Shown: positions 5,313 to 59,839 of the stretch, in pieces
Numbering within the stretch: position 1 is the first letter of the stretch
Layout: the number at the start of each line of letters is the position of its first letter
IMG/VR virus record: IMGVR_UViG_3300030098_004828
Coordinates: 62,001 to 126,000 of that record
Strand: one strand, 5' to 3'
DNA: 64,000 nucleotides
Notes under the pieces: model-generated
What the model was told of the DNA's origin: nothing
The model's input: the letters and a program-made list of their open reading frames with translations, nothing else
Databases searched by the model: none
Made by a program: the position numbers and the translations under genes

Positions 5313-5314
5313 CT

Positions 5315-8006: not shown

Positions 8007-11000
8007 ATGGCAAGTTATATAGAAGGTGTACAAGATTATATACCAAATTTAGAAGTATTTACTCCAGATTATCAGTTTTTAAATAATGTTTTAAAGACTA
8101 GACAAGATAGGTATGATGCAGGTTTTGAGCAAGTTAATCAGCTTTATGGTCAAATTGTACATGCTCCTTTAACAAATCCTCATAACATTGAAAAGAGACA
8201 ACAATATGTTGATGGTTTAAGTGAAAAAATTAAACAAGTTAGTGGGTTAGATCTTTCTTTAAATCAGAATATTACTACAGCACGTTCTTTATTTAAACCT
8301 TTCTATGAAGATAAAAATATGCTTTTTGATATGGCTTGGTCACAAATGTATAAAGATGGAATGACTCAAGCTAAAATGTATAAGGAATCTGCAGATGAAG
8401 AAGTCCGTAAAAAATATTGGGACTATGGAATTAGATGGATGGATATACAAAAAGAAAAAATGGTAAATTCACCTTTAGAAAATATAATGAGTGTCCCTAT
8501 GCCAGAATATCATGAAGATCCAAATCTTTATGCTAGAGCTGTAAAGTCTTTATCAACTTTTGGACCTGAAGGTAAAGGTATGGTTATACAAAAACCTAGT
8601 ACATCTCCTGATGATTTTTGGTTATATGATCAAATAAATGGATCATTAATTTATGCAGAACCTGTTGGTGAAAGAATAAATGATGAAACTGGAAAAAAGG
8701 AAACTATATATCATAATCCAGCAATGCCTTATTTAGCTAGAACCTTATTAAATGATCCTGAAGTTATAGATGGTTATAGAATAAGAGCAGAAGTTGATGC
8801 TTATGATTATGGTAAAGCACACGCACAACAATTTGGTGGAGATGAAAAGCTTGCTAGATTAAACTTTATGAAAACATTTATAGATGATACAACTAATACA
8901 GCTATTCAGCAATTAGCAGAATTTAATACTATTCATGAACGTGATAAAAATATTGCTTTAAATTGGGAAGCATATCAAAAACAATTTGGAATTGTACCAG
9001 GAAGTCAAGATGAAAAACTTTTAAAAGAATTTGAAACAAAATATTTCCTTAATGAGCAGAGCATGTTATCATTAAGAAAAGATATACAAAGAATTCAGCA
9101 ACCAACAGAAGAATATAATTCAATGTTTAATACAATGATTTATGCATATGCGATGTCTATGATAGATCATGATTTAACAAGTGCAACACAATTTTATGGT
9201 GATGCTACAGCAAAGATTACAAGAAAACATAATCCATATAAAATGGAAGCTATACAAGCTGAGAATAGAAGAAATCAAGCAATATTAGAATCTTGGTTAA
9301 GAACGCAAGAAGCAATAGCAAAAGGAGAAATGGCAAATCCTGGATTATTATTTCCAGAAGCAAATCCTATGACGGGAGATGCTAGTAAACATGGTTATAC
9401 ATATGACGATATTTCAGAAGTTCTTGGTGAAGATTTTACAGTGTTTGATGACGGTTTCAACGCTTTACAAAAATCAATGAAGACAGACGTGTATACACCT
9501 ATGATGAATGATATAACTAAATTATATTTAGGAGTAGATGGTATTAGAAATACATTGAGAGGAGATGGTCCTATAGGAACAATTGAATTTGTAGATTCAG
9601 ATGGTGTAACAAAAAATGTAACATTAAATGAAGCTGTTCCATTATTATTAGAGGATCCAGATGCTTTAAATGAAGTCTATGATAAAGCTATGTCTTACTG
9701 GAATAATGAAGTATACATAGATGGAGTGCTGACAAATACAAATGTTCCTCAAAAAAAATTCTATCAAGAATTATCAAACTACCTTAATGAAAGTGAAGCA
9801 GATAGACTTTTAGCTCAAAATTATATTAATACAGGTTTAAATGAATGGATGCAAACTGTTGATGCAACATTAACTATGATGAATACTGCAGATGGAGCAT
9901 ATGGTGATTTAAATAATTCAGAATTTCCTCCTATGGTTATAACAGAACTTGATAAATATTTAATGAAAGAACAAAAAATACCATGGGAAATAGTAAATAA
10001 AGAAGGAGGTGCTAGAGATCAGCACTTAGCAGAACATCCTAATGATGTTAGAAAAGATCAAAGAACTTTTCTTTTTAAAGATGAATATGAACATATAGTG
10101 TTAAATAGTTATAATGCTGTTAATAATGATAATAAACATTTAAAAAGTGTTTTAGAAACAGCTCTTAATGATTATAAGATACAAAATAATTTACCAGCAG
10201 GTTGGCCAGGCCCAACTTATGAACAAGTAACTATACAACCAACTAATACTTATGGTGTTAGTGGAGCAAATACTGGAGGTACTGAATTACGAATAGTTGA
10301 TCCTGGAATTAGTAGTCAAGAGGCAACTAAAATTATGCAACAAATTATGTCTCAAAATCCATTGTTTCAAGGTAAAGAAGATTACTGGAGATGGGAAGTT
10401 CCTTTTACACAAGGTACAACATCACAAGGACAGACTCAAGATGTAGGAGCATATTCTAATTATCTTAATATGGGTAAATCTGATCAACAAATAGCTGATA
10501 GTAAAAAGGCTAACATTGTATACTCTGGTCCAACTTTAGATGGAGATGTTGCTGAATATTATGATTTAATGGAAAAGAATGTTAATAATATTATGACAGA
10601 TGCTAATGCAAGAGGAGAATATGGTTTACCTTCTTATAATTTAAGAGCATATCTTGAAGGTGCAGATCCTAATTTAGGTGTAGCTGGTATATTATCAACA
10701 CCTGTTCAAGTTAATTTTGATGTTAAAAATATGCATCCAAATAGTGATGGATATAAAACATGGGTTGATATAATGAATGCTATGAATTCAGATGCAGGAG
10801 GAAATGTAATTATTAAATTAGGAGATTGGAGTGGTACATTTGATCCTAATGACACAGAAGATGATCCTTTAGCTGTAAAACTATTACAAGAATATAGTAA
10901 TATGGTAAGAAAAGATGCTGGTAATGCAAAAGCTGGAGAAACAAGAGCTACAGGTACAGTTATTTATTCAGAAATAGGAGGAGGTCCAGGAGCTGCAGGA

Positions 11001-11657: not shown

Positions 11658-11673
11658 AATAAAACTAAAATAA

Positions 11674-14600
11674 ATGGCAGAAGAAACACAAATAATTCCA
11701 GAAGGTTCAGGAAAAACAGGTAATGTTTTTGAAGAAGGGTTAAATGTTAATAGCACTCCTAATGATGCTAATTTAGATTTAACATCATCTTCTGTTGTAG
11801 ATAATTTACCTTATGATAATACACCTTTACATACACCCGGATGGAAAAATATATCAGATGTTGTAGCTGAACAAGGTGAATATTTTGCAGGACCTCCTGG
11901 AATGAATATAGATCCTTCTATATGGGCAGATGTTGGTAGAATGGATAAGATGTTAGCTGAACATGGTCTTGGTAATAATAATAACTTTTATAATCCTCTT
12001 CCTGGACAATCTGCAGGATCATTTAATCCTTTTGCAGAAAGCTCAGGAATTCTTGATCCTAATACTCTTGAAGGAAGAAGAGCTAAATTAACTCAAGTAA
12101 TTAATAATGCTCAACAAAATACACCTGGAAGAAATCCCGCATATAGAGATCCTATTTATTATGGAGCTAAGGCTTTTAATTTAGATAGATATACTAGTCA
12201 TCCAGCTTTTGATAGATTAGGTTTTCATCCTTTTGCAGATAATGATGCTTACTATAATGCAAATTCTAGTAAATGGGAAAACTTTCAAAGAACTTGGGGA
12301 GCTTTTGGTAGTATGTTTCATGAAGCATTTACAAGCCCTTGGAGATCTATAGGAGACTTTTTAGAAGGTGATTGGAATAGGGCTGATTATATAGGAGCTT
12401 CAGCAATGGAAGATGCTATGAGAATAGGTAGATCTACAAAAGGTGGAGTAGGAGGATTTTTTAATGATTTATTTTTAAATTTTTCATATACTTTAGGTAT
12501 TATTTCAAATGTTGTTTTAGAAGAAATGGCTCTTGCTGGAATAACATATTTATCAGGAGGTACAGCTGCTCCTGCTGCTGGTGCTAGAACAGTTTATAAT
12601 GTTGGAAGAATAATGAGGACTGGTGATAAAATAAATGATGCAAGAAAAGCTTCTCAAAGAACATTAGAAGCTATGAAAAATTATAACAATGTTAATAATT
12701 TTTGGAAGTTTACAAGAGGTGTAGGTAGATGGACTATGCCACAAACAGCTCAATTCTATAGAAGATTGCGTACTGCAGGTAGTACTGTAGATAACATGAA
12801 CAATCTAGGGAAATTAAGATTGGGTGCTGGTGCTCTATATAGAGATCTTAGAATGGCAAATTTAGCTTGGTCAGAAGCTAAAATGGAAGCAGGTCTTGTT
12901 GAAATGCAATTGCGTAATAAAAAATATCAAGAATATAGAAGAGCTAATAATGGAGCTCATCCAGATGAAGAATGGTTAAACGCATTAAATGTAGATGCAT
13001 TAAATGCAGCACAAACTACAATATTTTGGAATGCTCCTTTTATTCATTTAACTAATCAATTTGTTTTTCCTGGCTTAGGACGTGGTTTTAGAGGTGTAGG
13101 TAGACAATTTGATGACTCATTAGATGCAGTACCAGATGCAATACAAAGAGAATTAAAGAAACAAAAACCAAGTGGTATGCCTGGAAAATTTTATGATGCA
13201 GGTAAAGGTGTTTCTAGAATTAAATCAGAAGGTCTTAAAGGAGGATTAACTAAAGGTGCAAATTATGCATTAAGATATTTTGGAGCTAATGTTGGTGAGG
13301 GTGCGCAAGAGCTATATCAAGAAGCTGTTGCTGTAGGTGTAGAACACTATTATGGAAGTCTTTTTGATATGAGATTATCTACAGGATTAGATCTTCAAAG
13401 AGCTGATATGGAATTGTCTGCACAACAAGGTAGTAAATTATTTTGGGATTCTTTTCAAGAAGGTGCAAACTCTCAAATGGGATGGAATGGTTTTAAAGTT
13501 TTTATGTCTGGATTTATGATGGGGGGATTAGCAAGAATGGTTCAAACTCCAGTTTTAGATTGGGCTCCCAATTATGTTAATAAAAAATGGAATCAAGCTA
13601 AGTATGATAAATACGAAAAGCAAAAAGAAAAATTTAAAGCAAATGCTTTAGAGTATTTAGAAAACGGTAGAAAAGATCCTTTACATGTATTTGATAAAAC
13701 AAAAATAAATGTATTAAATCAAAGAGAAGCAAATCAACAAATGTATGCTGCATCTTTTTCTGGACAAGCTATGGAACATTATGATGCAAAAGATTGGGCT
13801 AAATTTGAACACTTTGAAACATATGTATCTATGGGTAAAACTCATCATTTTATTGATATAATAGATGATTACTTAGCATTAGATAATAAATCTTTTAGAG
13901 AAGCTTTTCCAGTAGAAACATATCCTGATTCAGTTGCAAAAATTAGATCTAGATTAGAGCAAAACAAAAAGGAAATAAATGAAATGAAAAGGAAGTATGA
14001 GGAAAGAAAAGAATTATACTCCAATCCTTTTAGTGAAGACAGATTTGAAGAAGGAACTGTATTATATCAACAAGAAAAATTACGAAGACTATCCTATGAC
14101 CATGCTAGAAAATTAGCTATGTATGTAGATTCATCTTTTGAAAGAGCTGTAGAAAGAATAAACAATATGTATAAAGCTTTATCTAGTGGGGATCTTAAAG
14201 TTTTAAAAAATATACAAGCTAATGAATTAGATCCTTTAATGGGTAAAAGACAATTAGAAGCAGAATTAGAATTATTAAATGTTGAACTAACAGGAACACT
14301 TAGTCAAAAAGATATAAAATTTAAAACTAAAAAGAAAGAACTTCTTACAGAGTTTTCTAATATAATTCATAATCCTAAATATCAAACTCCAAAAACAAAA
14401 GTATTTAGTAAAACTCATATGCCTAAATTAAGAAAAGCTTTTACAGATTATCTTAATTTTTTAGCTAAAGCAAAAAATGAATTTGTTGAAAGTAAAAATA
14501 TTGACAAAGCTCTTAATGCAATAGTTGATACACAATGGTTAGAAAAAAGATCAGGAGATCTTCATGATGCTGCAAGAATTTTGATGAATCCTAAAAAACT

Positions 14601-17600
14601 AGAACAAGTAGCAGATAGAATAAACTTTTCTATGAGAAGAGTTTGGAATACTATGCGTGATAAAAATCATCAAATAAAAGAAATAGATAAGTATATTAGA
14701 GAGACAGAAAGAATGGCTGTATTACAAAAGCTTTCAGAAGAAGATATATATCCACATCCAATTCAAACAATGATATACTTAGAGCAAGGTATAAAACCTA
14801 CTCTATTTTATAATAAGAAAGGTATTATAGATCAATTAAATCAACCAGAAGAACATAAAAAAATACTTAGTATTTTTAATTTAAGTGATGATACATCAGA
14901 AGATGGAAAAGATGCTAAAAAAGAAAATGCAGAAGAAATAGAAAAACAAGCTAAAGAAAGTAAAGAAAAAGATGAGGTAGAAAAAGAAGAAACAGATTTA
15001 ACAGTGGGTGGAACAGGGGAAGTTCCTGATGAAAAAAAGAAAGAAAAAGAAGAAGAAGTAGAGTATGAAGTTCCAAAAAATACTGATAGTGATAGTACTA
15101 TAGTAGATTTAGTACCAAAAAATAATGATAAACCTCCAGCATCTTTAGGTAAAGTGTTAAGTTCTGTAAACAATGATACAAAAATTCAAAATGTTCTTAA
15201 TAATAAATATGAACAATGGGCAGCTAATCAAGCACTAGAAGATCCTAATAGAAGTATAATGACTCAAGAATTATGGGAACAAGATGAAACATTAGGAGGT
15301 GCAATAAAATCTGCAAGAAAAGAACTTTTTAAATTATATGCTAAAAAGGTAAGTCTTAAAGATAGACAATCAACTCCTTTTGATACTTGGTTAAAATCTA
15401 ATGCCGCAAATTTAGAAGTTGATGATATTATTGAAAAATATCCTTTAGCTACTAGCAGTGTGCAAGATATTATGATAGGTGATGTTACAGCAGTACAACC
15501 TATGCCTGAAGAAAAATTAAATCCTAGTTTAGAATCTATAGTATCTGATGGTAAAAAAGATAAAACAGGAATATGGATTCTTAAATCATCAATAGAATTA
15601 GATCCTGATGCAGATCCTAAAGAACTTTATACAGTTACTGATAATAATAAAATTGATTTGTCTGAGAAGTTTTTTCATTTAGATCCTGCATCTTTAGATC
15701 CAGATGGTTATGATACATTAGATGAAGCACAAAGAGCTAAAGATAAAATACTTAAATGGTTAGGTAAACCAGAAGATAGAGATTTTGTTTTTGATGGAAT
15801 ACAGTTTAGAAGAGGAATGAGTATTGTTAAAGGAGAAGATCTTAATGATTGGAAAAATGCTGAACAAGAAGATAAAGGAAATTATGAATGGACAGTAATG
15901 GCCAATAAAAAAACTGTAGAAAATAATAATAATGTATGGATTCAAAAAAAGGTTGGAAATACTATAGAAAAAGGAGACAAGCCTATAGTATTAGAAGAAG
16001 GTGATTGGGCAGCTGATGGATGGGTTATTGAGTTTGATGCAAAAGAATTATCACAAAAAGAAAAACAAAAAACAAAAACTAAATTACAAAAGACAGAACC
16101 TTTACAATTTTTTGCTATTACAGAAAGTAAAGGTGAAACCACTTATACTAAAATAAAAAGACACGAGAAGCTTTTAAAATCAATGACTCCTGAAAAACAA
16201 AAGAATCTTGTATTACGTATAATGAGAATGGAAGACTTTGAAGAAAAAATGAAGATTCCAGTAAAAAAATTAACACCTTTAGAATTTGAAACTAAGCAGC
16301 CAAATAAGAGAATTAGAAAAGGATATGTTAAACATAGAGTCTTTTTAGAATATGATGGTTATGATATTGCAGAACTTCAAGGTATACATTCTTCAGTAAT
16401 ACTAGATGAAAACAATAAGGAATTAAATCCTATGACAATGTCTAACAAACAAATCCTTGAAACATTTGTTATGGGTGAGCATGATAAAGCTAGAGGTGTA
16501 ACAGAACAAGAATTTGCAGATACTGTTAGAAATAACTATAAGCAAGGATATCTTATAATGAAAAAGATAGATGAATATATGGGAGAAAACTTAGCAACTG
16601 AGATTCCTTTCTATATAGAGGGTAAAAAGAATCCTGTCTTAGAAGATATAGGTATTACTATACAAGCTGGTAATATAGCATATTCAACTTCAGTAGCTAA
16701 TAGAAGTACATTTGATCAATTAGAATATAAATCTGCAGATAGTAAAATAAATAAAGATGGTTCTAAAGGTAGTCAAGTTATTTATAGTTTATATAAAGAT
16801 AAAAATGGAGATTGGAGAGAAGCTCCTTTTGATAATTTTGATCAAGCTACTACAGAGAATGAAGATTATAGAGATTCACAATTAGAATTAATTGAGAATG
16901 ATAGAAAGATGGTAGATTTAGATATTAAGTCTTTAGGAAGATATGTAATGGTTATTAGAGATGATAGAGGGGTTTATACTTATGCAGCTTTACAACCTAG
17001 AGAAAAAACTTCTGTAGAGTTAGAAGAAATGTTTACTCAATTAAAAGAAAGACATATAGAAACTTTAAAAGAAAACTATGTATCTGTAGAGGGAACAAAT
17101 AAAAGAATGATTAAAAAGGGTAAAAAATATACAGATCAAGGTTTTGGAATGCAATACAATAATGAATTTAATTCAAACTTTTCAGAGACCCATTTCATTG
17201 CTAGTAAAACAAAAGGAGATGTTATTGTACTAGGAGTAGATCCTTATGGAAATATTAATCTAGAGTATTTTAATAGGATAACAAAGCATGAAACACGTGT
17301 GTCACTTAATGAAGAAGAAGTGGCCACTGCATCAAACTTTTTAGAATTATTAAATTTACTTAATGAAAAATGGAAAAAAACAGAATGGGCTAAAGCTTAT
17401 AAAAAAGTAGAGGGAACAAAAAAAGCAGTTAAAGATGTTAATAGACCTAACTTTAAAATACAACCTATAGACTTTAGAATTTCATTACCAAGAACTATAA
17501 CTACAGAACAATTATCAGATGTTAAAATATTAATACAACCTGAAATAAGAAAAAATATACGTACAGTATTAAGTTATACAAAACAATCTGAAATAGATAT

Positions 17601-29049: not shown

Positions 29050-29069
29050 ATAATTAGTATATTAGTATT

Positions 29070-32000
29070 ATGGCATGTGTAAATAGAAATACAACAGAAT
29101 ATAAAGTTTTATTAGAGGAATTTAAGAGTCCTATAGCAGTTGACTTATTAGTTGATAATTGGCAAAAGTTTAATAAAAAAAATACAATGCCTACAGTAAG
29201 TGAACTTAAAGATTACAATAATCAAAGAAAGAAACTCTTTAGTTTACAAAAAAGACAGTTTACAGAATCAATTGTTGTAAAGCTATCTGATTTAGGAATT
29301 ATAAAAAAAGATTATAATATTTCAAGGAATGGTGATTTTTCAGGATCAATTGAAGATGGTGGAATGTGGCATGAAGAACTTGATGAAGAATATGTAACAA
29401 TACTAGAAGATCAATTAAGAAATGAAGAGATAGAACCTATGGATTATGATATAGCCTTGGAGCAGGCATATGTTTATAAGTATAGAGGAGCATCTTTAGA
29501 AACTTTAGAGCAAAATAGAAACAGATTAATGTCTTTTTTAGATGCATTTAATCTTCCTTCAGATTTTATAAATGTTAGAGTTAGAAGTTTGGAAGAAAGC
29601 ATGTTTATAGAAAACGAACCTTTAATAAGATATGCTGATGAGATTGCAACAAAAGAAAATAAAAAGATATATAGAAAAAAATTACCTATAAAACTTACAC
29701 GTCCAGCAATTAATATTATTAGGGAGTTAAATAAAAAAGGAAATAAAGCTTTAATTGTAGGTGGTGCTGTAAGAGATTCATTAAGAGGAGTTGAAAATAA
29801 AGATATTGATATTGAAGTATATGGAATTAGTTATGGTAATCTAGAAAACTTGTTATCAAAATATGGTAGAGTTAGTGTGGTTGGAAAATCTTTTGGTGTT
29901 ATTAAATTTGAAGATGAGTCAGGAGTAGAATATGATTTTTCTGTACCAAGAAGAGAAAGCACTAAGGGTGTTGGTCATAAAGATTTTAAAATAGATGTAG
30001 ACCCTAATATGTCACCTGAAGAAGCTGCTAAAAGAAGAGACTTTACATGGAATGCTTTAGCTTATGATCCTATTAAAGAAGAAATACATGATTATTTTGG
30101 TGGTATAAAAGCTATACAAAGAGGTACAATGGAAATTACTTCTGAACAATTTATAGAAGACCCCTTAAGAGTTCTTAGAGCAATGCAGTTTCAATCCAGA
30201 TCCGGAGATAAAATTTCTGCAAAAGATTATGGAATAATGAAACAAATGGTAAGACAGGGAGCATGGGATAACTTACCTAAAGAAAGAATATCTGAAGAGT
30301 TTATGAAGTGGGCATTAAAGGGAAAAAATCCTTCAATGATATTTAACTTCTTAAGAAAAACAAATTTAATGCAAGAGCTTCCTTATATTGGTCTACTAAA
30401 AGGTGTTAAGCAGGATAAAGAATGGCATCCAGAAGGAGATGTAGAAGTTCATACAGGTTATGTTATGGACGCTGCAGTAAAAATAGCTGACAGAGAAGGA
30501 TTAAAAGGAGATGATAGAGCGGTATTAATATTTGCAGCTTTAACACATGATTTTGCTAAACCTCAAACTACAGAAAAAAATTTAATAGAGTATCAAGAAA
30601 AAGAAACAGGGAAGACACAAACAAGAATGGCAATTACTTCTAGGGGTCATGAAAAAGCAGGTGGGCCTTTAGCAAAAGAATTTTTAGAATCAATAGGAAT
30701 TAAAAAATCTATTATAGATAGAGTTGTACCACTTGTTGTAGAACACTTACAACATGTTAGTATAGCAGCATTACCTGAAGAAAAAGGAAAAGTAACTGCA
30801 GTAAAAACATTGGCTAGAAAATTAGAGCCTTCTAATATACAGGAGCTTTTATATTTAATAGAAGCAGATAATTCTGGTAGACCTCCATTACCTAAAGGTC
30901 TTGGTCAAGCTGGTGTTGAATTAAAAAGATTAGCTAAAAATGTAAAAGTTACTACTAAACCTAAAAAAGATTTATTACAAGGAAGAGATCTTATTAGTTT
31001 AGGTATGAAACCAGGTGAACAGTTTTCAGAAGTTTTAAATAAAGCAAGGCGTGCAGAAGATGAAGGTATATTTAATACAGTTGAAGGTGGAAAACTTTGG
31101 GTTAGAAAAAACATATTAAAAGAAGATGTAGAACTTGAAGAAGTTAAACCTATGAATGTTAAAGTTGAAAGCAAAGATGATTCAATGGAAACGGACATGG
31201 AGCCTTTAGCTAATGATAATTATGAATATCTTCCTGAATATGAATTTAATACAAATAGAAATACTTTAGAAGTAGATGATATTATAACAGAAGATATTTC
31301 TAAAGATCTTACCTTTACAAGAACTATAATAAATCATTTAGAAAGAATATTTCCTGATATAAATGTACAATATATAACAGAGTTGGAATATAAAGCAATG
31401 AGACTTGTAGAACAAGATGTTACAAGAGAGTTGTTAGAAGCAGAAGGAATGGAGACAATAAAAGAGGATGAAGTTAAAAGCTTTTTTTATGATGGAACTG
31501 CTTATATAATAAAAGATAGAATTACTGCAGAAACAGCTATAGAAGAAGTATTACATCCATTTGTAAATGCATTAGAGAGTGACAATAAAGCACTATTCAA
31601 TTCTTTATTAAAAGAAGCAAAATTAAATTTTCCTACTTTAAGAGCTCAAATAGAAGGTGTATATACAGATGAAAAAGGTTTTTCTCCTTTAGAAAGAAAC
31701 TTAGAGCTTGTTACACAAGCTTTAACAAGACACTTTAAAAAAGAATATGAAGATACACCAACTACAAATTGGAGATCTAAAATTAAAGATTTAATAACAT
31801 GGTTAGCAGAAACTGTTAAAAACATTTATACTTATATTACAAGTGGTTTTTTAAGTGTAAGCCCAGAACAAATAAGTTCTGCAAATAACTTAACAGATGT
31901 TGCTAAACTTCTTAATACAGAAGGTTTATTAATTAGATTTAAAGGAGGTAAAAAAGATAAAGGTGCCTTTAGATCATTTAAACAATATAGTCTTACTGAG

Positions 32001-35000
32001 TCAAGAAAAGAACAGTATAATAAAGCTTTAGCTTTAGCTAAAACAGATCTTCAAAAAGCTACTATAGAATTCTTTTTTAATAGACAGATAACAAATCCTA
32101 AACAATTTAGTCAACTTGTTGCAAGTCATACTATAGAAGGTATAGCAGGACCATTAGTTACATTAAATAAAAAAGATCATATTTATTATGAAATTCCAAA
32201 TCTATTAGAATATACTAGTGTTACAACAGCTATTAAAGGTTATATGACATCTAAAAATCCTCATGTAGTTAAAAAGGGAGAAACTATAAATGACATAATT
32301 AAAGAATTTGAAGTTAGTAGAAAAATTTTAGACAGAATGAATCCTGAAATTAATCTTGATACTATTAAAACTGGTGATTCTGTAAACATACCTGATCAAG
32401 ATTTTGTTCTTAATAGAAAAATAGGAGATGATTTTGATTCTATTGTAGATGGATTAGCTGCTTTTAAATCTTTTAACGAACTTCCTGCAATGAAAGTTTT
32501 AAATAAAGAAGTAGCAGAAGAAGCTTATAAAGAAGCATCACTTGTACTTACAGGTATAAGAGCAGCTGGTGCAGTTCTTATACCTCAAGTTATAGTTGCA
32601 GATCCTATAAATAAAATAGCAGGTAGTATTGATATATTAGCAATATATCCTGATGGTACTTATCAGGTTATAGACTTAAAAACAAGTAGAAATAGTGTTG
32701 TAGGATTAAAAAGTAAATACAAAACTGTAGCATATCCTGTTAACGTTGGTAGTATATTTACAAAAGGAAAGGTTGAAAGACAACACAAAATAGTAGATGG
32801 AAAAAAGAAATATACAGAAGAATATAATCCTACTATTCATTGGCCAGAATTTACTACAGAACAACAACACAATATGCAGGTTAATCTTTATAATAGAATG
32901 TTACATAATATGGGTTATGTTCAAAATACTGCTCCATCTATAACATTACATATTAAAGTTGAAGTTGAAGGTTATGGTAAAGATCAAAAGTTTTTAGATG
33001 AATTTAATTTTGAAGAATCTAATTTTCATCCTATGTCACAAAATCAAGATAAGGTTGATAAAGTTATTCCTGTCAAAGTTAATCAAGAAATGAGAAAAGT
33101 ATTACACGAGGTGTATAAAAATTCTCCTGAATTTAATCCAGTAAGAGGTGATAACTTTTTAACTGATGATCAAGCTCAACCTGAATCAACAACTAATATA
33201 GATTCTGCTAAAGGTAAAGAAGAGTATAAAGCTGTAATGAAAATTACAAAAGATTATGTTGGACATCTTACAAACAGAGAAGAATCAATTAAACAACTAA
33301 CTAAGCATATTAAAAATATTGACAAGTATGCTAAAATGGAATTAGAAAGAATTCAAGTACACACAGATATGATAACTTTAGCATTTAAAAAAGGTAAAGT
33401 TAGACAGGTTTACACTAGACTTCTTAAAGAAAGTATTGATCAATTAACAGAAGTTAAAAATTATTTTTTAGATCCAAAAAACTTTAATAAGAATGAATAC
33501 TTAAAAAGAATAAATCACTATGAAACTTTTATAGATTCTTTTGAAGGTCTTACTACAATAGATAAAGAATCTTTAAAACAATTAAATTCTGAGCAACGTG
33601 CATTAAAAGATGAATTGGTGTCTTTAATACAAGATCTAAAAGGTAGAATAAATACGAAAGGACAAATAGTTGAAGTTGGTATTTTACAAACTGCACAAGA
33701 AAATTGGATGAAAGCTTTTGTAAAACAAAGAAGTTCCGGGAAAATGATTCAAGGAACTGAATATGGTTTTGGTACTGCACAAGAAAGTCAAGTAATTAGA
33801 GACTGGTCAGATGAAGATTTAAATGAATTATTACAATGGGCATATGAGATACAAGGAGGAGAGGCAAATCTTGGAGATATGTCAACATCTAGTGATACCT
33901 TAATGGCATTGGCTGATCAGTTTTATTCAGAAAAAGTTCAAGAGGTTATTGATATAAGAGAAAAATTTGATTCAATGATTAGTGTTTTAGAACGTAGACT
34001 TGAAAGATTAGGATCAAAAAATCCTCAAACTAGATATGAGTTTATGTTAAATGAAGATGGTTCTATTGTTAAAGAATTAGGAGGTGAATATTCTAAACTA
34101 AAAAGAGAGCTTATGGATCTCATGATGAATCATGATGGTAGTAAAAGAGAATATATTATAAAAGGTTTTGATGGAGAATACACTAAACAAGAAATAGAAC
34201 ATAATGAAAAATTGTTTAAGGATAAAAAAAGAGCAGGTGATTTTTGGAGACCAGAAATTATTGTAGAAGGTGTTGTTGACCATGGAGAATATCATCAATA
34301 CTCTCCAGAATATATAAAAGAAAGGAAAAAGTTTATGCGTTATAAGTATTGGAAGAAAAAAGGTTGGGGAGAATGGCAACAAAAACCTGGTGTTTCTGAT
34401 AAGGCTTTTAGAGAATTTTGGAGCAAATGGCATGAAACAAGAACATATAATAAACCTCAAATAATAAAAGGAAGATTTACTGGTAAAATGGAAACAGCAA
34501 CTAAGGACTTTATAAAATGGACAGTTGATGGTAAACCAACCAAGATACCAAGATTAATTACAGGTTCTGGTAAAAGCATGCGTAGTAAAAGATATGATAA
34601 AATAATGAATCCTAAAACAGAATTGGGTAGAGCTGAAAAAGAGTTTTATGAATTTTGGATAAAACATTGGGAGGGACCTAAAGGTATGTTAAGTAGAATG
34701 CCAGAAGGGGTTAGAAAAATGATGACAGATAGATCTCCTTTAGTAGTTAGTAGATTAGCTAAAGAATTAAAAGGTAAACCTAGTTTTATTAGAAAATTAT
34801 GGGCAAAAACTATTGGTGGAAGTTTAAAAGATGGTGTAAAAAGTTTATTTGGTGATAATACATTTGATGGTAAAAAAGTTCTTGTAGATGAATATGGATA
34901 TGTTGTAGACAGCATTCCTATGTATTTTATAGGTAAACCAAAATTAAAAGAAGATTTAGAAAAAATAGAAAAAGCACTTAATAAGCTTGATTCTCAACTT

Positions 35001-36851
35001 GAAAAAAATATAATAGGTAAACAAGCTTATATAAAAAAGAAAGCAGAATTAGATAGGGTTAGAACTAGAATTATGAATGCTCCATCTGTGGAAGAAGTTA
35101 GTAGAGATTTAGGAGATAGTCTTAAGAAATTTAATTTAATGTCAGCTCATTATAATATTATGAGTGAATCAGAAGATGTATTTTCAACTATACTTAAAGT
35201 CATGGAGCGTAGAGAATATTTCCCTAAGGATAAAAGACATAGACAATATAAAATAGGAAAAAAAGGAGAGCAAATAGAAGTAGGAACAAAGAAAGGGGGA
35301 CAGTCTTTAAAAGAAGCAAAAAATGTAACCAGATTTAAAAAATGGTTGCACATGGTGTTCTATGATAAAGATGCTTTAGATCAACCTAGATATCAAAAAA
35401 TGGTTAACGCTTTAAAAAATTATACATCTGTTGCTTATGTTGCTTTTAATACATTTGGTAACATAAATAACTATATGATTGGTAGAATGAACAACTGGAT
35501 TGAAACTGCCGGTGCTCAATTTTATACAAGGAAAGCTTATGCTCAAGCTGAACTTGAGTTTAATACGAAAGTTATGCCAGATATGATGGAGCAATTAGGT
35601 AAGAAAAATGCAGTAGGAGACTTAATAGGACTTAGTAAAAGTGATTATGATCCTGTAGTTCCTAGAACTAAAGCATTAGCAGCCATAGGTTATTTCAGAA
35701 TGATGGATGATAAACAAGAAATAGCAGAGACAGGATTAGGTTATGATCAATCTTACTTAGGAAAAATTATAACATGGGCCTATGGTATTAACTATTCTTT
35801 TGAGTTTAATGTGCAAAGTAAAGTTGGTAGAGCAATACTTGGAAGTTTAATGTTAGAGAAATCTACAGTTAATGAACAAGGAGAATATATTGAAAAACCT
35901 GTTGGTGAACCAGAAACTCTTTCTATTTTTGATGCAATGCAATATAACAATCAAACAGGAGAGGTAACATTTAAAGAAGGATTTAATACATTTATAGATC
36001 AACACGGTAGAAAAATGCCTTGGACTGGAGAAGGTGGAAGAGCTCATAAGCTAGTAAGAAATTATATAAGAGAAGTAAATAAACAAATTCACGGTAACTA
36101 TGCTCATAAAGATAGAGCAGCTTTTCAACAAGGAGCAATAGGTCAACTATTATTTCAATTTCATAAATGGACTTATCCAGCATTAAAGGCTAGATTTAGA
36201 CCAGAATATTATGATGAAAATTTAGGATACCTACAAGGTAGATACAGAACTTGGATTAGTTTCTTTGGTTATTTATCTAAATATGTATATGATAGTAAGA
36301 ACAAAGGTAATCAACCAGGGTTTTTTACAGATCCTATAAAAGGAAAAGTAAGAAGAGCAAATATGATAAAAAATGGAACAGAGCTTACATTTTTTGTAAC
36401 ATCATATATATTAACAATATTATTAAGCAATCTTTTTGAAGATGATGATGATGAAGTTGGTACAAGTAGTAGAAGATTAAAGAATGCTCTTATATATCAA
36501 ATAAATAGATTACGTAGAGAAACTGGTCAATTTATACCTGTATTAGGATGGCCAGAATTATTTCAAATGGTTCAAAGCCCAATGGCATCTACAAGAACTC
36601 TTGGAGAATTAGGAGGGGCAATTGAAAAATCTTTTGCTACAGGATTAGCGTTTATGTATTATCCTTTATTTGTTGGTGGAAACTGGCAAAAAGAAATGAA
36701 GAAAAATAAAGATTTCTATTATCAAAGAGGAGCAAGAAAAGGATCTTTAAAATTAGGTAAAGAATGGTCAGATGTTATCCCTCTGTGGTACTTAAGAAAT
36801 AGATGGATAGGATATGACACAGTTAGGGATATGCATATACCAGGATTATAA
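29070..36851 (+). CDS. Giant virion ejection-type polyprotein (2593 aa) with CCA-adding/HD, PD-(D/E)xK nuclease, LysM and membrane segments
   Basis: CCA motifs GGAVRD..DIDIE, RRDFTWNA, EDPLRVLR, HPEGDVEVH, HDFAKP; TAIEEVLHPF; LysM HVVKKGET...NIP; nuclease IAGSIDIL..IDLKT..QVNLY; hydrophobic C-terminal helices. Confidence 0.85.
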   Translation: MACVNRNTTEYKVLLEEFKSPIAVDLLVDNWQKFNKKNTMPTVSELKDYNNQRKKLFSLQKRQFTESIVVKLSDLGIIKKDYNISRNGDFSGSIEDGGMWHEELDEEYVTILEDQLRNEEIEPMDYDIALEQAYVYKYRGASLETLEQNRNRLMSFLDAFNLPSDFINVRVRSLEESMFIENEPLIRYADEIATKENKKIYRKKLPIKLTRPAINIIRELNKKGNKALIVGGAVRDSLRGVENKDIDIEVYGISYGNLENLLSKYGRVSVVGKSFGVIKFEDESGVEYDFSVPRRESTKGVGHKDFKIDVDPNMSPEEAAKRRDFTWNALAYDPIKEEIHDYFGGIKAIQRGTMEITSEQFIEDPLRVLRAMQFQSRSGDKISAKDYGIMKQMVRQGAWDNLPKERISEEFMKWALKGKNPSMIFNFLRKTNLMQELPYIGLLKGVKQDKEWHPEGDVEVHTGYVMDAAVKIADREGLKGDDRAVLIFAALTHDFAKPQTTEKNLIEYQEKETGKTQTRMAITSRGHEKAGGPLAKEFLESIGIKKSIIDRVVPLVVEHLQHVSIAALPEEKGKVTAVKTLARKLEPSNIQELLYLIEADNSGRPPLPKGLGQAGVELKRLAKNVKVTTKPKKDLLQGRDLISLGMKPGEQFSEVLNKARRAEDEGIFNTVEGGKLWVRKNILKEDVELEEVKPMNVKVESKDDSMETDMEPLANDNYEYLPEYEFNTNRNTLEVDDIITEDISKDLTFTRTIINHLERIFPDINVQYITELEYKAMRLVEQDVTRELLEAEGMETIKEDEVKSFFYDGTAYIIKDRITAETAIEEVLHPFVNALESDNKALFNSLLKEAKLNFPTLRAQIEGVYTDEKGFSPLERNLELVTQALTRHFKKEYEDTPTTNWRSKIKDLITWLAETVKNIYTYITSGFLSVSPEQISSANNLTDVAKLLNTEGLLIRFKGGKKDKGAFRSFKQYSLTESRKEQYNKALALAKTDLQKATIEFFFNRQITNPKQFSQLVASHTIEGIAGPLVTLNKKDHIYYEIPNLLEYTSVTTAIKGYMTSKNPHVVKKGETINDIIKEFEVSRKILDRMNPEINLDTIKTGDSVNIPDQDFVLNRKIGDDFDSIVDGLAAFKSFNELPAMKVLNKEVAEEAYKEASLVLTGIRAAGAVLIPQVIVADPINKIAGSIDILAIYPDGTYQVIDLKTSRNSVVGLKSKYKTVAYPVNVGSIFTKGKVERQHKIVDGKKKYTEEYNPTIHWPEFTTEQQHNMQVNLYNRMLHNMGYVQNTAPSITLHIKVEVEGYGKDQKFLDEFNFEESNFHPMSQNQDKVDKVIPVKVNQEMRKVLHEVYKNSPEFNPVRGDNFLTDDQAQPESTTNIDSAKGKEEYKAVMKITKDYVGHLTNREESIKQLTKHIKNIDKYAKMELERIQVHTDMITLAFKKGKVRQVYTRLLKESIDQLTEVKNYFLDPKNFNKNEYLKRINHYETFIDSFEGLTTIDKESLKQLNSEQRALKDELVSLIQDLKGRINTKGQIVEVGILQTAQENWMKAFVKQRSSGKMIQGTEYGFGTAQESQVIRDWSDEDLNELLQWAYEIQGGEANLGDMSTSSDTLMALADQFYSEKVQEVIDIREKFDSMISVLERRLERLGSKNPQTRYEFMLNEDGSIVKELGGEYSKLKRELMDLMMNHDGSKREYIIKGFDGEYTKQEIEHNEKLFKDKKRAGDFWRPEIIVEGVVDHGEYHQYSPEYIKERKKFMRYKYWKKKGWGEWQQKPGVSDKAFREFWSKWHETRTYNKPQIIKGRFTGKMETATKDFIKWTVDGKPTKIPRLITGSGKSMRSKRYDKIMNPKTELGRAEKEFYEFWIKHWEGPKGMLSRMPEGVRKMMTDRSPLVVSRLAKELKGKPSFIRKLWAKTIGGSLKDGVKSLFGDNTFDGKKVLVDEYGYVVDSIPMYFIGKPKLKEDLEKIEKALNKLDSQLEKNIIGKQAYIKKKAELDRVRTRIMNAPSVEEVSRDLGDSLKKFNLMSAHYNIMSESEDVFSTILKVMERREYFPKDKRHRQYKIGKKGEQIEVGTKKGGQSLKEAKNVTRFKKWLHMVFYDKDALDQPRYQKMVNALKNYTSVAYVAFNTFGNINNYMIGRMNNWIETAGAQFYTRKAYAQAELEFNTKVMPDMMEQLGKKNAVGDLIGLSKSDYDPVVPRTKALAAIGYFRMMDDKQEIAETGLGYDQSYLGKIITWAYGINYSFEFNVQSKVGRAILGSLMLEKSTVNEQGEYIEKPVGEPETLSIFDAMQYNNQTGEVTFKEGFNTFIDQHGRKMPWTGEGGRAHKLVRNYIREVNKQIHGNYAHKDRAAFQQGAIGQLLFQFHKWTYPALKARFRPEYYDENLGYLQGRYRTWISFFGYLSKYVYDSKNKGNQPGFFTDPIKGKVRRANMIKNGTELTFFVTSYILTILLSNLFEDDDDEVGTSSRRLKNALIYQINRLRRETGQFIPVLGWPELFQMVQSPMASTRTLGELGGAIEKSFATGLAFMYYPLFVGGNWQKEMKKNKDFYYQRGARKGSLKLGKEWSDVIPLWYLRNRWIGYDTVRDMHIPGL
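29680..31110 (+). other. cca: Class II CCA-adding tRNA nucleotidyltransferase domain with HD phosphohydrolase (within the 2593-aa protein)
   Basis: Motif A GGAVRD-x7-DIDIE, motif B RRDFTWNAL, motif D EDPLRVLRAMQF, LPKERISEE, HD-domain entry HPEGDVEVHT, HD dyad in THDFAKP, GHEK, EHLQH, ADNSGR, and tail LLQGRDLISLGMKPGEQFSEVL. Confidence 0.9.
32262..32393 (+). other. LysM domain (within the 2593-aa protein)
   Basis: HVVKKGETINDIIKEFEVSRKILDRMNPEINLDTIKTGDSVNIP fits the LysM consensus (h.V..GDTL..IA......l...N......l..Gq.l.iP). Confidence 0.85.
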
Positions 36852-41698: not shown

Positions 41699-42073
41699 AT
41701 GGCAAACTCATTAACTCCAACATTAACGTTGAACAGTAATACTGCCCCAACTAATTCACCTCCATTGGTTTTTACAGAGACTGATGTACTTGCTACAGCT
41801 GTCCCAATTGTTGAAACATCACAGGTAAGTGTTGGCACTGTTACTGCTCATCAAATTTTGGACTCAACAACACAAACTTCTGCTACATATGTGTATCTTA
41901 AAAACGAAGATACTGTTAATTCAGTGCTTGTTAAAACAGATGCTGGGGTCACTTTTGGAAAATTACATCCTGGTGAATTTATGTTCTATTGTGCAAATGT
42001 ACAAGAAGGACTAGAAGTGATAGCATTGACTGCTGATTGCGTTGTAGAAATTGGATACTGGACTAAAGCTTAG
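41699..42073 (+). CDS. Small beta-rich protein, paralog of 46534-46908
   Basis: TYVYLKNED..N.VLVKTD.G....L.PGEFMF aligns with TYVYVKNTD..N.VVLKTD.G.....GPDEFAF. Confidence 0.6.
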   Translation: MANSLTPTLTLNSNTAPTNSPPLVFTETDVLATAVPIVETSQVSVGTVTAHQILDSTTQTSATYVYLKNEDTVNSVLVKTDAGVTFGKLHPGEFMFYCANVQEGLEVIALTADCVVEIGYWTKA

Positions 42074-42077
42074 TAAT

Positions 42078-59838: not shown

Positions 59839-59839
59839 T

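What the first reader, a model, noticed from the sequence alone, without database searches (positions are those of the whole stretch)
8007..36851. Ejection cassette as a pre-loaded multi-enzyme takeover and counter-defence kit
Seen: three consecutive giant genes together encode an RNAP, two macro-like domains, HExxH and EExxH zincin-like modules, CCA/HD, a PD-(D/E)xK nuclease, LysM and membrane segments. Established: crAss-like phages package large proteins, including the RNAP, that are ejected into the host. Inference: the conserved channel/RNAP scaffold serves as a carrier into which accessory enzymes are plugged, each matched to an early host response (tRNA end damage, ADP-ribose/NAD-type modification, DNA degradation). 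This would be a modular injected anti-defence payload system.
Basis: inference. Interest (0 to 1): 0.8.

Follow-up and report, generated by a model that had tools for sequence, protein, structure and literature searches.

The report
Modular injected-protein genes, marine crAss-like phage
Three giant neighbouring genes of an uncultured marine crAss-like phage encode the RNA polymerase and partner proteins that such phages carry in the virion, and this lineage has spliced extra enzyme modules into them, including a tRNA-end repair enzyme found in no relative; the general idea of injected multi-enzyme proteins is already published.

Summary
A (1216 aa), B (5791 aa) and C (2593 aa) are intact, tightly spaced ORFs.

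- **B** holds a crAss-type virion RNA polymerase (family profile vs PDB 6VR4, E=7e-14; invariant DxDxD), an invariant HExxH…EE zincin motif, a macro-fold module of the A1S_2505 family and a divergent DUF7831 module.
- **C** holds an intact class-II CCA-adding/HD enzyme, an invariant EExxH motif, a LysM and a PD-(D/E)xK nuclease.
- **Not confirmed:** the "membrane segments" are weak, and the second "macro" was not shown to have a macro fold.

About 100 relatives show a conserved scaffold with variable linkers.
- **Lineage-specific inserts:** CCA/HD and LysM are absent from all 101 other C-family proteins. The A1S_2505 module sits at different positions in different relatives. DUF7831 sits at one fixed site in 18 of 67.
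- **Invariant scaffold, not plug-ins:** both zincin-like motifs, the nuclease and the polymerase. Most variable segments match no known family.

Virion delivery rests on homology and gene order only. Anti-defence roles are untested. The concept matches the published "polyvalent proteins" of Iyer et al. 2017. I rate it a new variant of a known kind, of moderate interest.

The parts
8007..11657 (+). Gene A (1216 aa). Residues 1-450 are conserved in 20 homologues. Residues 480-1216 are unique to this lineage. No family assigned.
11674..29049 (+). Gene B (5791 aa): giant fusion protein containing the virion-type RNA polymerase.
11971..14973 (+). B residues 100-1100: conserved N-terminal block of unknown function, present in 20/21 homologues.
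18571..21543 (+). B residues 2300-3290: conserved block with the zincin-type motif HEAGH (nt 18811-18825) and E2461/E2462 (nt 19054-19059), invariant in 21/21.
21544..22770 (+). B residues 3291-3699: variable insert at the block2/RNAP junction. Half of the relatives have only 50-90 aa here. The first ~190 aa match nothing.
22126..22566 (+). B residues 3485-3631: A1S_2505-family module (FGANSLGLHGRGGAG) with a predicted macro fold.
22771..27273 (+). B residues 3700-5200: crAss-type RNA polymerase region. Catalytic DMDND at nt 24736-24750.
24964..25275 (+). B residues 4431-4534: ~100-aa insert inside the polymerase region. Most relatives have 6-33 aa here. It contains a chance EExxH at residue 4509.
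27301..27786 (+). B residues ~5210-5371: divergent DUF7831 module directly after the polymerase. The same site is occupied in 18/67 relatives. It is interrupted by a Lys/Glu-rich stretch.
27787..29046 (+). B C-terminal tail with no detectable relatives. Only a 63%-identical fragment was found among 1.84 billion representatives.
29070..36851 (+). Gene C (2593 aa): partner cargo protein, an orthologue of phi14:2 GenBank gp076.
29070..29369 (+). C residues 1-100: N-terminal leader conserved in the whole family (M1, C3, N5, N7, E10...).
29370..31229 (+). C residues ~101-720: inserted CCA-adding nucleotidyltransferase plus HD domain (detected core 225-666), with flanking linkers. Absent from all other family members.
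31230..31844 (+). C residues 721-925: conserved block with the invariant EEVLH motif (nt 31542-31556). Weak profile match, with motifs in register, to B's HExxH block.
32256..32393 (+). C residues 1063-1108: LysM peptidoglycan-binding module, a 46-aa insert absent from all relatives.
32394..33104 (+). C residues 1109-1345: PD-(D/E)xK (RecB/Cas4-like) nuclease domain, conserved in the family.
33105..36848 (+). C residues 1346-2593: conserved C-terminal region. Its last ~600 aa are homologous to phi14:2 gp076 and the Kolpuevirus 1372-aa protein. Conserved hydrophobic stretch plus acidic run at nt 36381-36437.
81..7942 (+). Two upstream genes of the same block, outside the finding. U1 is 2572 aa in full, starts before the window and has two HExxH motifs. 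U2 is 875 aa.

Best explanation
**What it is.** Genes B and C, probably together with A and the two genes upstream, are the 'cargo' genes of a marine crAss-like podophage. Its host is probably a Bacteroidota.

**How it most likely works.** In characterised relatives these proteins are packed in the virion. They are pushed into the cell ahead of or with the DNA, and the polymerase then transcribes the early genes.

**Conserved core of this lineage:**
- in B: an N-terminal block, a zincin-like HExxH block and the polymerase, fused into one 5791-aa protein;
- in C: a leader, an EExxH block, a PD-(D/E)xK nuclease and a C-terminal block.

**Extra modules inserted into the linkers between these blocks:**
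- in B: a macro-fold A1S_2505 module, a DUF7831 module and sequences with no relatives;
- in C: a complete CCA-adding/HD enzyme and a LysM.

Anything fused into a cargo protein is made late, packaged, and present in the next host cell before any phage gene is expressed.

**Inferred functions:**
- the CCA/HD module restores or heals tRNA 3' ends;
- the macro-fold module binds or removes ADP-ribose or a related nucleotide adduct or signal;
- LysM holds C on peptidoglycan during envelope crossing;
- the zincin-like block may cut the giant proteins into working pieces.

**Shown:** domain identities, insertion status and conservation. **Inferred:** packaging, delivery, cleavage and every biochemical role.
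For: - **RNAP:** homology and catalytic motif.
- **C is an orthologue of MS-verified virion proteins, and gene order is conserved**. The literature reports that gp66 is delivered into the cell and that gp65-67 orthologues are sometimes fused (10.1101/2020.03.07.982082). The crAss001 cargo proteins gp45-50 are described in PMC10172136.
- **Scaffold versus insert maps**.
- **CCA/HD:** intact motifs. Unique among 34+69 family proteins.
- **The fusion is real:** it is contiguous in contigs of four studies.
- **LysM is an insert**.
- **Macro fold**.
- **The A1S_2505 module is mobile:** 168 hits in IMG/VR. About 49 of the best 80 lie inside large ORFs, at N-terminal, internal or C-terminal positions. 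It is also the first gene at the left end of a T7-like Vibrio phage.
- **DUF7831** at a fixed site in 18/67 relatives.
- **Other modules in relatives:** cpYpsA, weak NADAR and weak ART-PolyVal.
- **Published framework:** polyvalent proteins built around a zincin hub (PMC5512222). Phage macro, NADAR and CCA enzymes have been proposed as counter-measures (PMC7824862).
Against: - No proteomic or experimental evidence exists for this phage. Only the polymerase region and C's C-terminal part are detectably homologous to proven virion proteins. A, U1, U2 and B's N-terminal 2300 aa are not.
- The CCA insert occurs in one lineage only, so it says little about a general mechanism.
- B's DUF7831 copy lacks the family's FxDN motif and may be inactive.
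- The macro model is of moderate confidence (pLDDT 68, TM about 0.5). No Pfam Macro match and no PDB match by sequence.
- If the giant proteins are cleaved before packaging, a given module need not enter the virion.
- A 99.6%-identical contig has a stop codon right after the CCA/HD module.
Confidence: 0.6

Rival explanations
1. The extra modules serve the phage's own housekeeping or entry mechanics, not counter-defence. The CCA/HD enzyme would mature or maintain tRNAs for phage translation. LysM and the zincin-like blocks would work on the cell wall during ejection. The nuclease would degrade host DNA for takeover. The macro-type modules would regulate a phage-driven ADP-ribosylation.
For: - Stand-alone CCA enzymes sit among tRNA-metabolism genes in zeta crAss-like phages (PMC12386605).
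- The published suggestion for the crAss zincin is polymerase activation or peptidoglycan digestion.
- The nuclease and both zincin-like motifs are invariant, as expected for core infection functions.
- A C-family relative may carry an ADP-ribosyltransferase-like insert (ART-PolyVal, E=0.0026, below cut-off).
Against: - No tRNA genes in the 64-kb window.
- A housekeeping enzyme has no obvious need to be fused into a cargo protein.
- The A1S_2505 module also occurs as the first left-end gene of a T7-like phage. I infer from T7-like genome layout that this is an early position.
Confidence: 0.25
2. The fusions are only translational. B and C are polyproteins cut by their zincin-like domains in the producing cell. 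The accessory enzymes are released there and act late, and only the conserved parts are packaged.
For: - The literature proposes that fused crAss giant proteins are cleaved. P1 DdrB is processed before packaging (PMC5512222).
- The natural variant with a stop after the CCA/HD module suggests the two parts can be made as separate proteins.
Against: - The CCA module sits behind the family's conserved N-terminal leader rather than at a free end.
- N4 vRNAP is packaged unprocessed.
- The stop variant is absent from contigs of two other studies that carry the same strain-marker SNPs.
Confidence: 0.12
3. The giant multi-domain ORFs are assembly or gene-calling artefacts, such as chimeric joins or read-through of separate genes.
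For: The source contig of 245,646 bp holds a second, divergent C-family gene about 118 kb away, so it is probably a join of two related genomes.
Against: - The B-to-C region is identical or near-identical in independent contigs from four studies. An 18.9-kb contig spans both borders of the CCA insert.
- Exact copies of A are on at least 24 contigs.
- Relatives have equally large ORFs in the same order.
Confidence: 0.03

Closest known systems
Virion RNA polymerase gp66 of Cellulophaga phage phi14:2 (PDB 6VR4) and its neighbours gp65/gp67; crAss001 gp47/gp49/gp50
   Same: - Homologous polymerase region with the DxDxD catalytic loop.
- A partner protein homologous to C's C-terminal part.
- The same late gene block next to the RNR genes.
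- A zincin-like motif in the partner: HExxH at residue 245 of phi14:2 gp076, against EExxH at a comparable offset in C once the insert is discounted.
- The same nuclease domain in the Kolpuevirus 2241-aa protein, which by size corresponds to crAss001 gp47.
   Different: - Here the polymerase is fused with about 3700 aa of upstream sequence into one 5791-aa protein.
- B carries its own invariant HExxH block upstream of the polymerase.
- C has EExxH instead of HExxH.
- CCA/HD, LysM, A1S_2505 and DUF7831 modules are added.
- No detectable similarity for B's first 2300 aa, or for A, U1 and U2.
Polyvalent proteins of phages and conjugative elements (Iyer et al. 2017, PMC5512222), including N4-like virion RNAP fused to a zincin peptidase, ART or lysozyme
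   Same: - Several unrelated enzymatic domains in one very large polypeptide.
- Encoded among late virion genes.
- A zincin-like peptidase as a recurring hub.
- A polymerase as one of the payloads.
- Proposed delivery with the DNA to act at the moment of invasion.
   Different: - The polymerase is the crAss two-barrel type, not the N4 single-subunit type.
- The words 'crAss' and 'CCA-adding' gave no hit in that paper's text.
- A CCA-adding enzyme, A1S_2505/DUF7831 and a RecB/Cas4-like nuclease are the modules here.
Stand-alone phage CCA-adding enzymes, macrodomains and NADAR proteins proposed as RNA-repair and counter-NAD/ADP-ribose factors (Iyer et al. 2021, PMC7824862)
   Same: The same enzyme families and the same proposed logic: repair of tRNA ends, and removal of ADP-ribose-derived signals or adducts.
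   Different: Those are ordinary expressed genes. Here the modules are embedded in presumed virion cargo proteins, so they would be present before any phage gene is expressed.
Packaged anti-defence or takeover proteins of model phages (T4 Alt and IPI*, P1 DarA/DarB/DdrB, T7 gp16 with its transglycosylase domain); named from my own knowledge, apart from P1 DdrB, which one search covers
   Same: The principle of pre-loaded proteins that act on arrival, and of an enzymatic domain fused to an ejection protein.
   Different: No sequence relationship was tested or expected. The enzymes and the virion architecture are different.

Membership tests
crAss-like virion RNA polymerase (phi14:2 gp66 type) | Sequence or profile homology to the solved enzyme across the catalytic region | tested here: met
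   Family profile A1 vs PDB 6VR4: E=7.4e-14. Two stretches match, gp66 836-1053 and 1332-1852. B alone gives no phmmer hit.
crAss-like virion RNA polymerase (phi14:2 gp66 type) | DxDxD metal-binding motif (DFDID in gp66) | tested here: met
   GADMDND in B. D4355/4357/4359 are invariant in 20 sequences and aligned to DFDID.
crAss-like virion RNA polymerase (phi14:2 gp66 type) | Encoded in the late block beside gp65/gp67-type genes | tested here: met
   C is homologous to phi14:2 gp076 (2.1e-18). The same gene order is seen in marine relative L003.
crAss-like virion RNA polymerase (phi14:2 gp66 type) | [quoted passage not shown] | not testable with these tools
   Uncultured phage; no proteomics available.
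Macrodomain (for B 3485-3631) | Macro fold | tested here: met
   AF2 model pLDDT 68, pTM 0.69. Nearly all of the top 50 Foldseek PDB hits are macrodomains (E from 5.5e-4, prob 0.9-1.0, TM 0.43-0.55). An Atlas structural neighbour of a look-alike includes microbial PARG.
Macrodomain (for B 3485-3631) | Match to a curated macro family model, or by sequence to a solved macrodomain | tested here: not met
   No Pfam Macro hit. The module profile finds no PDB chain. It does match NCBIfam A1S_2505_Nterm (34 bits, cut-off 45) and phrog_2072.
Macrodomain (for B 3485-3631) | ADP-ribose binding or hydrolysis | not testable with these tools
   Invariant N, H and Gly-rich loop (FGSNxxGxHGxGAA) are retained in B. 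Their role is unknown.
DUF7831 (for B ~5210-5371) | Match to the Pfam model above its cut-off, and the family's FxDN...NAFGI motifs | tested here: inconclusive
   Pfam 22.4-24.6 bits, cut-off 27. Clade HMM 1.7e-10. FxDN is replaced by YEDV, while the N of NAFGI is kept. The link to the macro-fold family is only 16 columns.
Class II CCA-adding enzyme with HD domain | Head-domain motifs GGxVRD and DxD, RRDxTxNA, EDxxRxxRxxxF | tested here: met
   GGAVRD 231, DIDIE 245, RRDFTWNA 322, EDPLRVLRAMQF 363. Pfam PolyA_pol 68.9 bits, cut-off 23.
Class II CCA-adding enzyme with HD domain | HD phosphohydrolase domain | tested here: met
   Pfam HD 28.9 bits, cut-off 22. THD at residue 492.
Class II CCA-adding enzyme with HD domain | Reaches an NCBIfam equivalog cut-off, so the specific function can be assigned | tested here: not met
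   Best hit PRK10885 at 156.6 bits against a cut-off of 451. CCA- versus A-adding or poly(A) specificity therefore stays open.
Zincin-like metallopeptidase | HExxH plus a downstream Glu ligand, conserved | tested here: met
   In B, H2380, E2381, H2384 and E2461/2462 are invariant in 21/21. The fold was not modelled, and the profile finds no PDB hit.
Zincin-like metallopeptidase (C 721-925) | HExxH | tested here: not met
   All 34 family members have EExxH. Profile-profile comparison to B's block gives E=0.005 and probability 7%, with the motifs in register. It is best called zincin-derived, with activity doubtful.
PD-(D/E)xK nuclease, RecB/Cas4-like | Motifs hxD, (D/E)xK and QxxxY | tested here: met
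   D1188, D1202-L-K1204 and Q1270...Y1274 are at least 90% conserved in 51 sequences.
PD-(D/E)xK nuclease, RecB/Cas4-like | Fold | tested here: met
   AF2 pLDDT 93. BFVD: 18 hits at E<=1e-3, the best at 7.8e-8, many named exonuclease, PD-(D/E)XK or Cas4. PDB hits are individually marginal (best 6e-3), but almost all belong to this superfamily.
LysM | Match to the Pfam model at its cut-off | tested here: inconclusive
   18.2 bits against 20.9, covering 43/43 model positions. A NCBIfam DipM hit and a PHROG endolysin hit fall on the same residues.
Polyvalent proteins (Iyer et al. 2017) | Two or more conflict-type domains in one polypeptide, with a zincin hub, encoded among virion genes | tested here: met
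   B has zincin, macro-fold, RNAP and DUF7831. C has CCA/HD, a zincin-like block, LysM and a nuclease. Both lie in the late block.
Polyvalent proteins (Iyer et al. 2017) | Delivered into the recipient cell with the DNA | not testable with these tools
   Inferred from homology to phi14:2 and crAss001 proteins only.

The most novel reading that the evidence does not exclude
This marine crAss-like lineage injects a working tRNA 3'-end repair enzyme (CCA-adding/HD), physically tethered to an ejection protein, together with a macro-fold enzyme of the uncharacterised A1S_2505 family built into the polymerase polyprotein. Host defences that clip tRNA ends or use ADP-ribose chemistry would then be neutralised before the first phage transcript is made. 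The linkers of crAss cargo proteins would be a general docking place where phages try out such 'time-zero' counter-defence enzymes. The many unrecognisable inserts would then be a reservoir of unknown anti-defence activities.
Probability: 0.2. Interest if true: 0.75.

Novelty: new variant of a known kind. Interest (0 to 1): 0.5.

Why it matters
Injected proteins are the only tools a phage has before its genes are read, so what is fused into them shows which host responses matter in the first seconds of infection.

- **A concrete, testable case.** This is an abundant ocean phage group. The stretch is held by 20 marine metagenome runs dated 2014-2025. An apparently intact tRNA-repair enzyme has been grafted into a cargo protein.
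- **A widespread uncharacterised family.** The A1S_2505 family has 168 hits in IMG/VR. It has a macro fold and hops between positions in giant virion proteins.
- **Where to look next.** The map of conserved blocks and variable linkers shows where to search for new early-acting phage enzymes.

The framework is not new. Polyvalent proteins and crAss cargo proteins are both published. The functional claims remain inference.

Tried and rejected
- **Direct scans.** Pfam, PHROG and NCBIfam scans of A and of B's first 3000 aa found nothing. Single-sequence PDB searches of B gave only noise.
- **Zincin block.** The profile of B's zincin block found no solved structure.
- **B 3300-3480.** No phage tblastn hit and no usable Atlas neighbour (best 0.69).
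- **B 5200-5340.** The Atlas gave noise (0.59).
- **B tail.** An exhaustive HMMER search found one close fragment only.
- **NADAR-like motif.** I suspected one (Y.GK.F.S..HAYQ..K.G) at the tail start of P0004, P0018 and P0002. Pfam was negative and a PDB profile search was negative. Only P0006 has a weak NADAR hit (0.0032). I keep it as a lead only.
- **'PD...ExK' string at C 762-775.** Rejected, because only P762 is conserved.
- **Hydrophobic C 1158-1176.** Rejected as a membrane helix. It is the IPQVVV strand of the nuclease.
- **EExxH at B 4509.** It lies in a lineage-specific insert and is probably a chance motif.
- **Upstream proteins.** B's N-terminal block, the 1100-2300 region, A, U1 and U2 show no significant match to phi14:2, Kolpuevirus or cr271 proteins.
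- **P0056.** This 3779-aa protein shares only the CCA region with C.
  - The same alignment had gone to the PDB sequence search in the same turn.
  - I then used it once as a query to fetch loci, which failed for lack of conserved columns.
  - I fetched relatives with another family alignment (A7) and built the accepted job only from window and fetched-locus translations.
  - Read laying was busy once and worked on the identical retry.
Full report
**1. What is in the sequence**

The window has five large co-oriented ORFs on the + strand, followed by a ribonucleotide reductase gene on the − strand:

| Name | Coordinates | Length |
|---|---|---|
| U1 | 81-5312 | 1743 aa in the window |
| U2 | 5315-7942 | 875 aa |
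| A | 8007-11657 | 1216 aa |
| B | 11674-29049 | 5791 aa |
| C | 29070-36851 | 2593 aa |

- None has an internal stop.
- U1 really starts upstream of the window and is 2572 aa.
- The DNA polymerase's best-covered annotated relative is Cellulophaga phage phi14:2, a marine crassvirus.
- The same gene order (>1455, 912, 1111, 4908 and 1880 aa, then RNR) is found on a Tara Oceans contig.
- In phi14:2 the corresponding block, GenBank gp082 to gp076, consists entirely of proteins found in virions by mass spectrometry.

**2. Gene B**

Twenty-one homologues of 4285-5614 aa exist, none more than 33% identical. Mapping them on B gives these regions:

| B residues | Status |
|---|---|
| 100-1100 | conserved block |
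| 1100-2300 | weakly conserved |
| 2300-3290 | conserved block |
| 3290-3700 | variable |
| 3700-4430 | conserved block |
| 4430-4535 | variable |
| 4535-5200 | conserved block |
| 5200-5791 | variable |

- **Polymerase.**
  - A profile of residues 3700-5200 hits the solved phi14:2 virion RNA polymerase (6VR4) at E=7.4e-14.
  - The invariant GADxDxDK loop aligns to gp66's DFDID.
  - Single-sequence searches miss this hit.
- **Zincin motif.** HEAGH at 2380 and E2461/E2462 are invariant in all 21 homologues. This zincin-type motif is therefore part of the scaffold.
- **Macro-fold module, residues 3485-3631.**
  - It matches phrog_2072 and NCBIfam A1S_2505_Nterm, the latter below its cut-off.
  - Protein-language-model look-alikes are A1S_2505 and DUF7831 clusters.
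  - With a 54-sequence alignment, AlphaFold2 gives a model of moderate confidence (pLDDT 68, pTM 0.69).
  - Its Foldseek hits are almost exclusively macrodomains: alphavirus nsP3, macroH2A, MacroD, DarG and TARG1.
  - B keeps the family's invariant residues (FG[SA]N..G.HG.G.A).
- **DUF7831 module, residues ~5210-5371.** It is a divergent member, below Pfam's cut-off but at 1.7e-10 against a clade-specific HMM. It lacks the FxDN motif and is interrupted by a Lys/Glu-rich stretch. I could not show that it has a macro fold. The profile-profile link to A1S_2505 covers 16 columns only.
- **Rest of the tail.** An exhaustive search of 1.84 billion representatives found one fragment, 63% identical.

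**3. Gene C**

- **Family size.** Thirty-three full-length homologues in the protein database are 1762-2610 aa. Sixty-eight further complete ones from IMG/VR are 1762-1991 aa, so C at 2593 aa is an outlier among these.
- **CCA/HD insert.**
  - C's first ~100 residues and residues 720-2593 align with the family.
  - Residues ~100-720 are an insertion. In P0023, for example, query 3-80 aligns to 4-81 and query 753-2590 to 161-1875.
  - The insert is a class-II CCA-adding-type nucleotidyltransferase with an HD domain, and all catalytic motifs are intact.
  - No NCBIfam equivalog cut-off is reached, so its exact specificity is open.
- **EExxH motif.** 'AIEExLHPF' (C 823-831) is invariant in 34/34 members. 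It lies at about the offset of the HExxH of phi14:2 gp076 once the insert is discounted. It aligns, weakly but in register, with B's HExxH block.
- **LysM.** Residues 1063-1108 are a 46-aa insertion absent from every relative.
- **Nuclease, residues 1109-1345.**
  - It carries conserved D1188, D1202-x-K1204 and Q1270xxxY1274.
  - The model has pLDDT 93.
  - It matches segments of crAss-phage giant or structural proteins labelled exonuclease or PD-(D/E)XK at E down to 7.8e-8.
  - In the PDB it matches EXO5, MGME1, AdnAB and Cas4 marginally.
  - The same domain sits at residues 1887-2066 of the Kolpuevirus 2241-aa 'RNAP subunit'.
- **C-terminal part.** About 600 residues are homologous to phi14:2 gp076 (2.1e-18), the Kolpuevirus 1372-aa protein (2.7e-26) and the C-terminus of the fused cr271_1 giant protein (3.5e-29).
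- **Membrane segments.** The best hydrophobic window, 1158-1176, is a strand of the nuclease. Residues 2438-2456 form a conserved hydrophobic stretch followed by an acidic run.

**4. Gene A**

Residues 1-450 are shared with 20 homologues. Residues 480-1216 are unique, while 17 of the homologues share a different C-terminal half. No family or fold was assigned.

**5. Is the plug-in picture right?**

It is partly right.

- **Insertion sites exist and recur.**
  - The block2/polymerase junction is 48-90 aa in half of B's relatives and 200-480 aa in the rest.
  - The junction inside the polymerase is usually 6-33 aa, but 105 aa in B and larger in two others.
  - Tails range from 240 to 803 aa.
- **The A1S_2505 module moves.**
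  - It sits at three different junctions in B, P0006 and P0021.
  - It sits at various places in giant proteins of gut crassviruses.
  - Among the best 80 of 168 IMG/VR hits, about 49 lie inside large ORFs (N-terminal, internal or C-terminal) and about 23 are stand-alone ORFs of ~150 aa.
  - In the T7-like Vibrio phage MGD2 it is the first gene at the left end.
- **DUF7831** occupies exactly one site, just after the polymerase, in 18 of 67 relatives.
- **Other relatives** carry a cpYpsA SLOG domain, and weak NADAR and ART-PolyVal matches, at such sites.
The two zincin-like motifs, the nuclease and the polymerase never vary. Most variable segments match nothing. The CCA/HD and LysM insertions are unique events.

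**6. Is the fusion real?**

- Contigs from four independent studies cover the region. One 29-kb contig is identical, and an 18.9-kb contig from a 2025 study spans both borders of the CCA insert with five substitutions.
- One 99.64%-identical contig has TTA→TAA at codon 621. This separates leader plus CCA/HD (620 aa) from the rest (1948 aa).
- Contigs sharing that strain's other SNPs keep TTA. The variant is therefore a rare allele or an error.

**7. Mechanism**

- **Shown here:** domain identities, conservation and insertion status.
- **Established elsewhere.**
  - gp66 of phi14:2 is packaged, enters the cell and transcribes early genes. Its neighbours are virion proteins, sometimes fused with it into a polyprotein.
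  - crAss001 stores about 5.5 MDa of cargo proteins, including three polymerase-associated ones.
- **Inferred for this phage.**
  - B and C are packaged.
  - Their extra modules therefore arrive with the DNA.
  - The CCA/HD module repairs tRNA 3' ends.
  - The macro-fold module handles ADP-ribose-type adducts or signals.
  - LysM anchors C in the wall.
  - The zincin block processes the giant proteins.
- No evidence links any module to a particular host defence.

**8. Comparison with what is known**

The architecture fits the 'polyvalent proteins' of Iyer et al. 2017. These are many conflict-type domains in one late-encoded polypeptide, with a zincin peptidase hub, delivered at invasion. N4-type virion polymerases fused to peptidase, ART or lysozyme are one example. 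Phage macro, NADAR and CCA-adding enzymes have been proposed as counter-measures, but as ordinary genes.

Three things appear new:
- a CCA-adding/HD enzyme inside a crass cargo protein;
- the macro fold and the positional mobility of the A1S_2505 family;
- the explicit scaffold/insert map for this marine clade.

I found no paper in the held library describing these, although those searches were limited. UniProt's automatic names already flag the nuclease in gut crAss proteins.

**9. Verdict**

I rate it a new variant of a known kind, of moderate interest.

Noticed in passing
window 30930-30932 (C codon 621); locus L005: A 9.6-kb contig from another metagenome is 99.64% identical to the window. 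It has TTA->TAA here, splitting C into a 620-aa leader+CCA/HD protein and a 1948-aa remainder. Contigs of two other studies with the same marker SNPs keep TTA.
   Followed up: yes
L016, L096 and L116 (IMGVR_UViG_3300030098_004828, 245,646 bp): The window's source contig holds a second, divergent C-family gene (1984 aa, 66% identical in the conserved motif) about 118 kb away. Relatives have contigs of 113-123 kb. The contig is therefore probably two related genomes joined, or else a genome with two cassettes.
   Followed up: partly
window 42051-45092 (+): A 1013-aa ORF ends in a type IX secretion C-terminal sorting domain (Por_Secre_tail, 2.2e-10). This points to a Bacteroidota host and to a phage protein exported by the host's T9SS.
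   Followed up: no
window 81-7942 (+): Two further large genes belong to the same block. U1 (2572 aa in full) has two HExxH motifs (HEYAH, HENQH), as does phi14:2 gp081. Neither U1 nor U2 matches any family.
   Followed up: partly
window 9444-11654 (A residues 480-1216): A's C-terminal 60% is unique, while 17 homologues share another C-terminal half. Its composition is Asn/Gly/Asp/Thr/Tyr-rich, unlike the helical-looking cargo proteins. It could be a swapped host-interaction or payload domain.
   Followed up: partly
window 27876-28709 (B residues 5401-5679): Between the window and L005, B's unmatched tail has 5 amino-acid-changing and 5 silent codon differences, against 3 and 19 in C (Fisher p=0.07). 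This hints at relaxed or diversifying selection.
   Followed up: partly
L001 (Kolpuevirus OQ198718) 20563-27288, protein residues 1887-2066: The gut crassvirus 2241-aa 'RNA-polymerase subunit' carries the same PD-(D/E)xK domain that C carries here. The nuclease is thus an old cargo component that sits in different polypeptides in different lineages.
   Followed up: partly
L014 (Vibrio phage MGD2) 1869-2333: A stand-alone A1S_2505 protein is the first gene at the left end of a T7-like genome. From T7-like genome layout I take this to be an early position, typical of host-takeover or anti-defence genes.
   Followed up: no
P0056 (3779 aa, JGI contig of 14 kb): An unrelated giant protein has a DxDxT HAD-like start, then a CCA/HD module at 234-706 that is 37% identical to C's. 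Nothing else is shared with this cassette.
   Followed up: partly
window 58576-61009 (-): An ATPase gene is followed by a DUF2201 putative metallopeptidase plus VWA-like protein (2.4e-20, 1.1e-16) in the replication-side block.
   Followed up: no
window 36381-36460 (C residues 2438-2465): A conserved hydrophobic segment is followed immediately by a conserved run of Asp residues in the whole C family. Its function is unknown.
   Followed up: no
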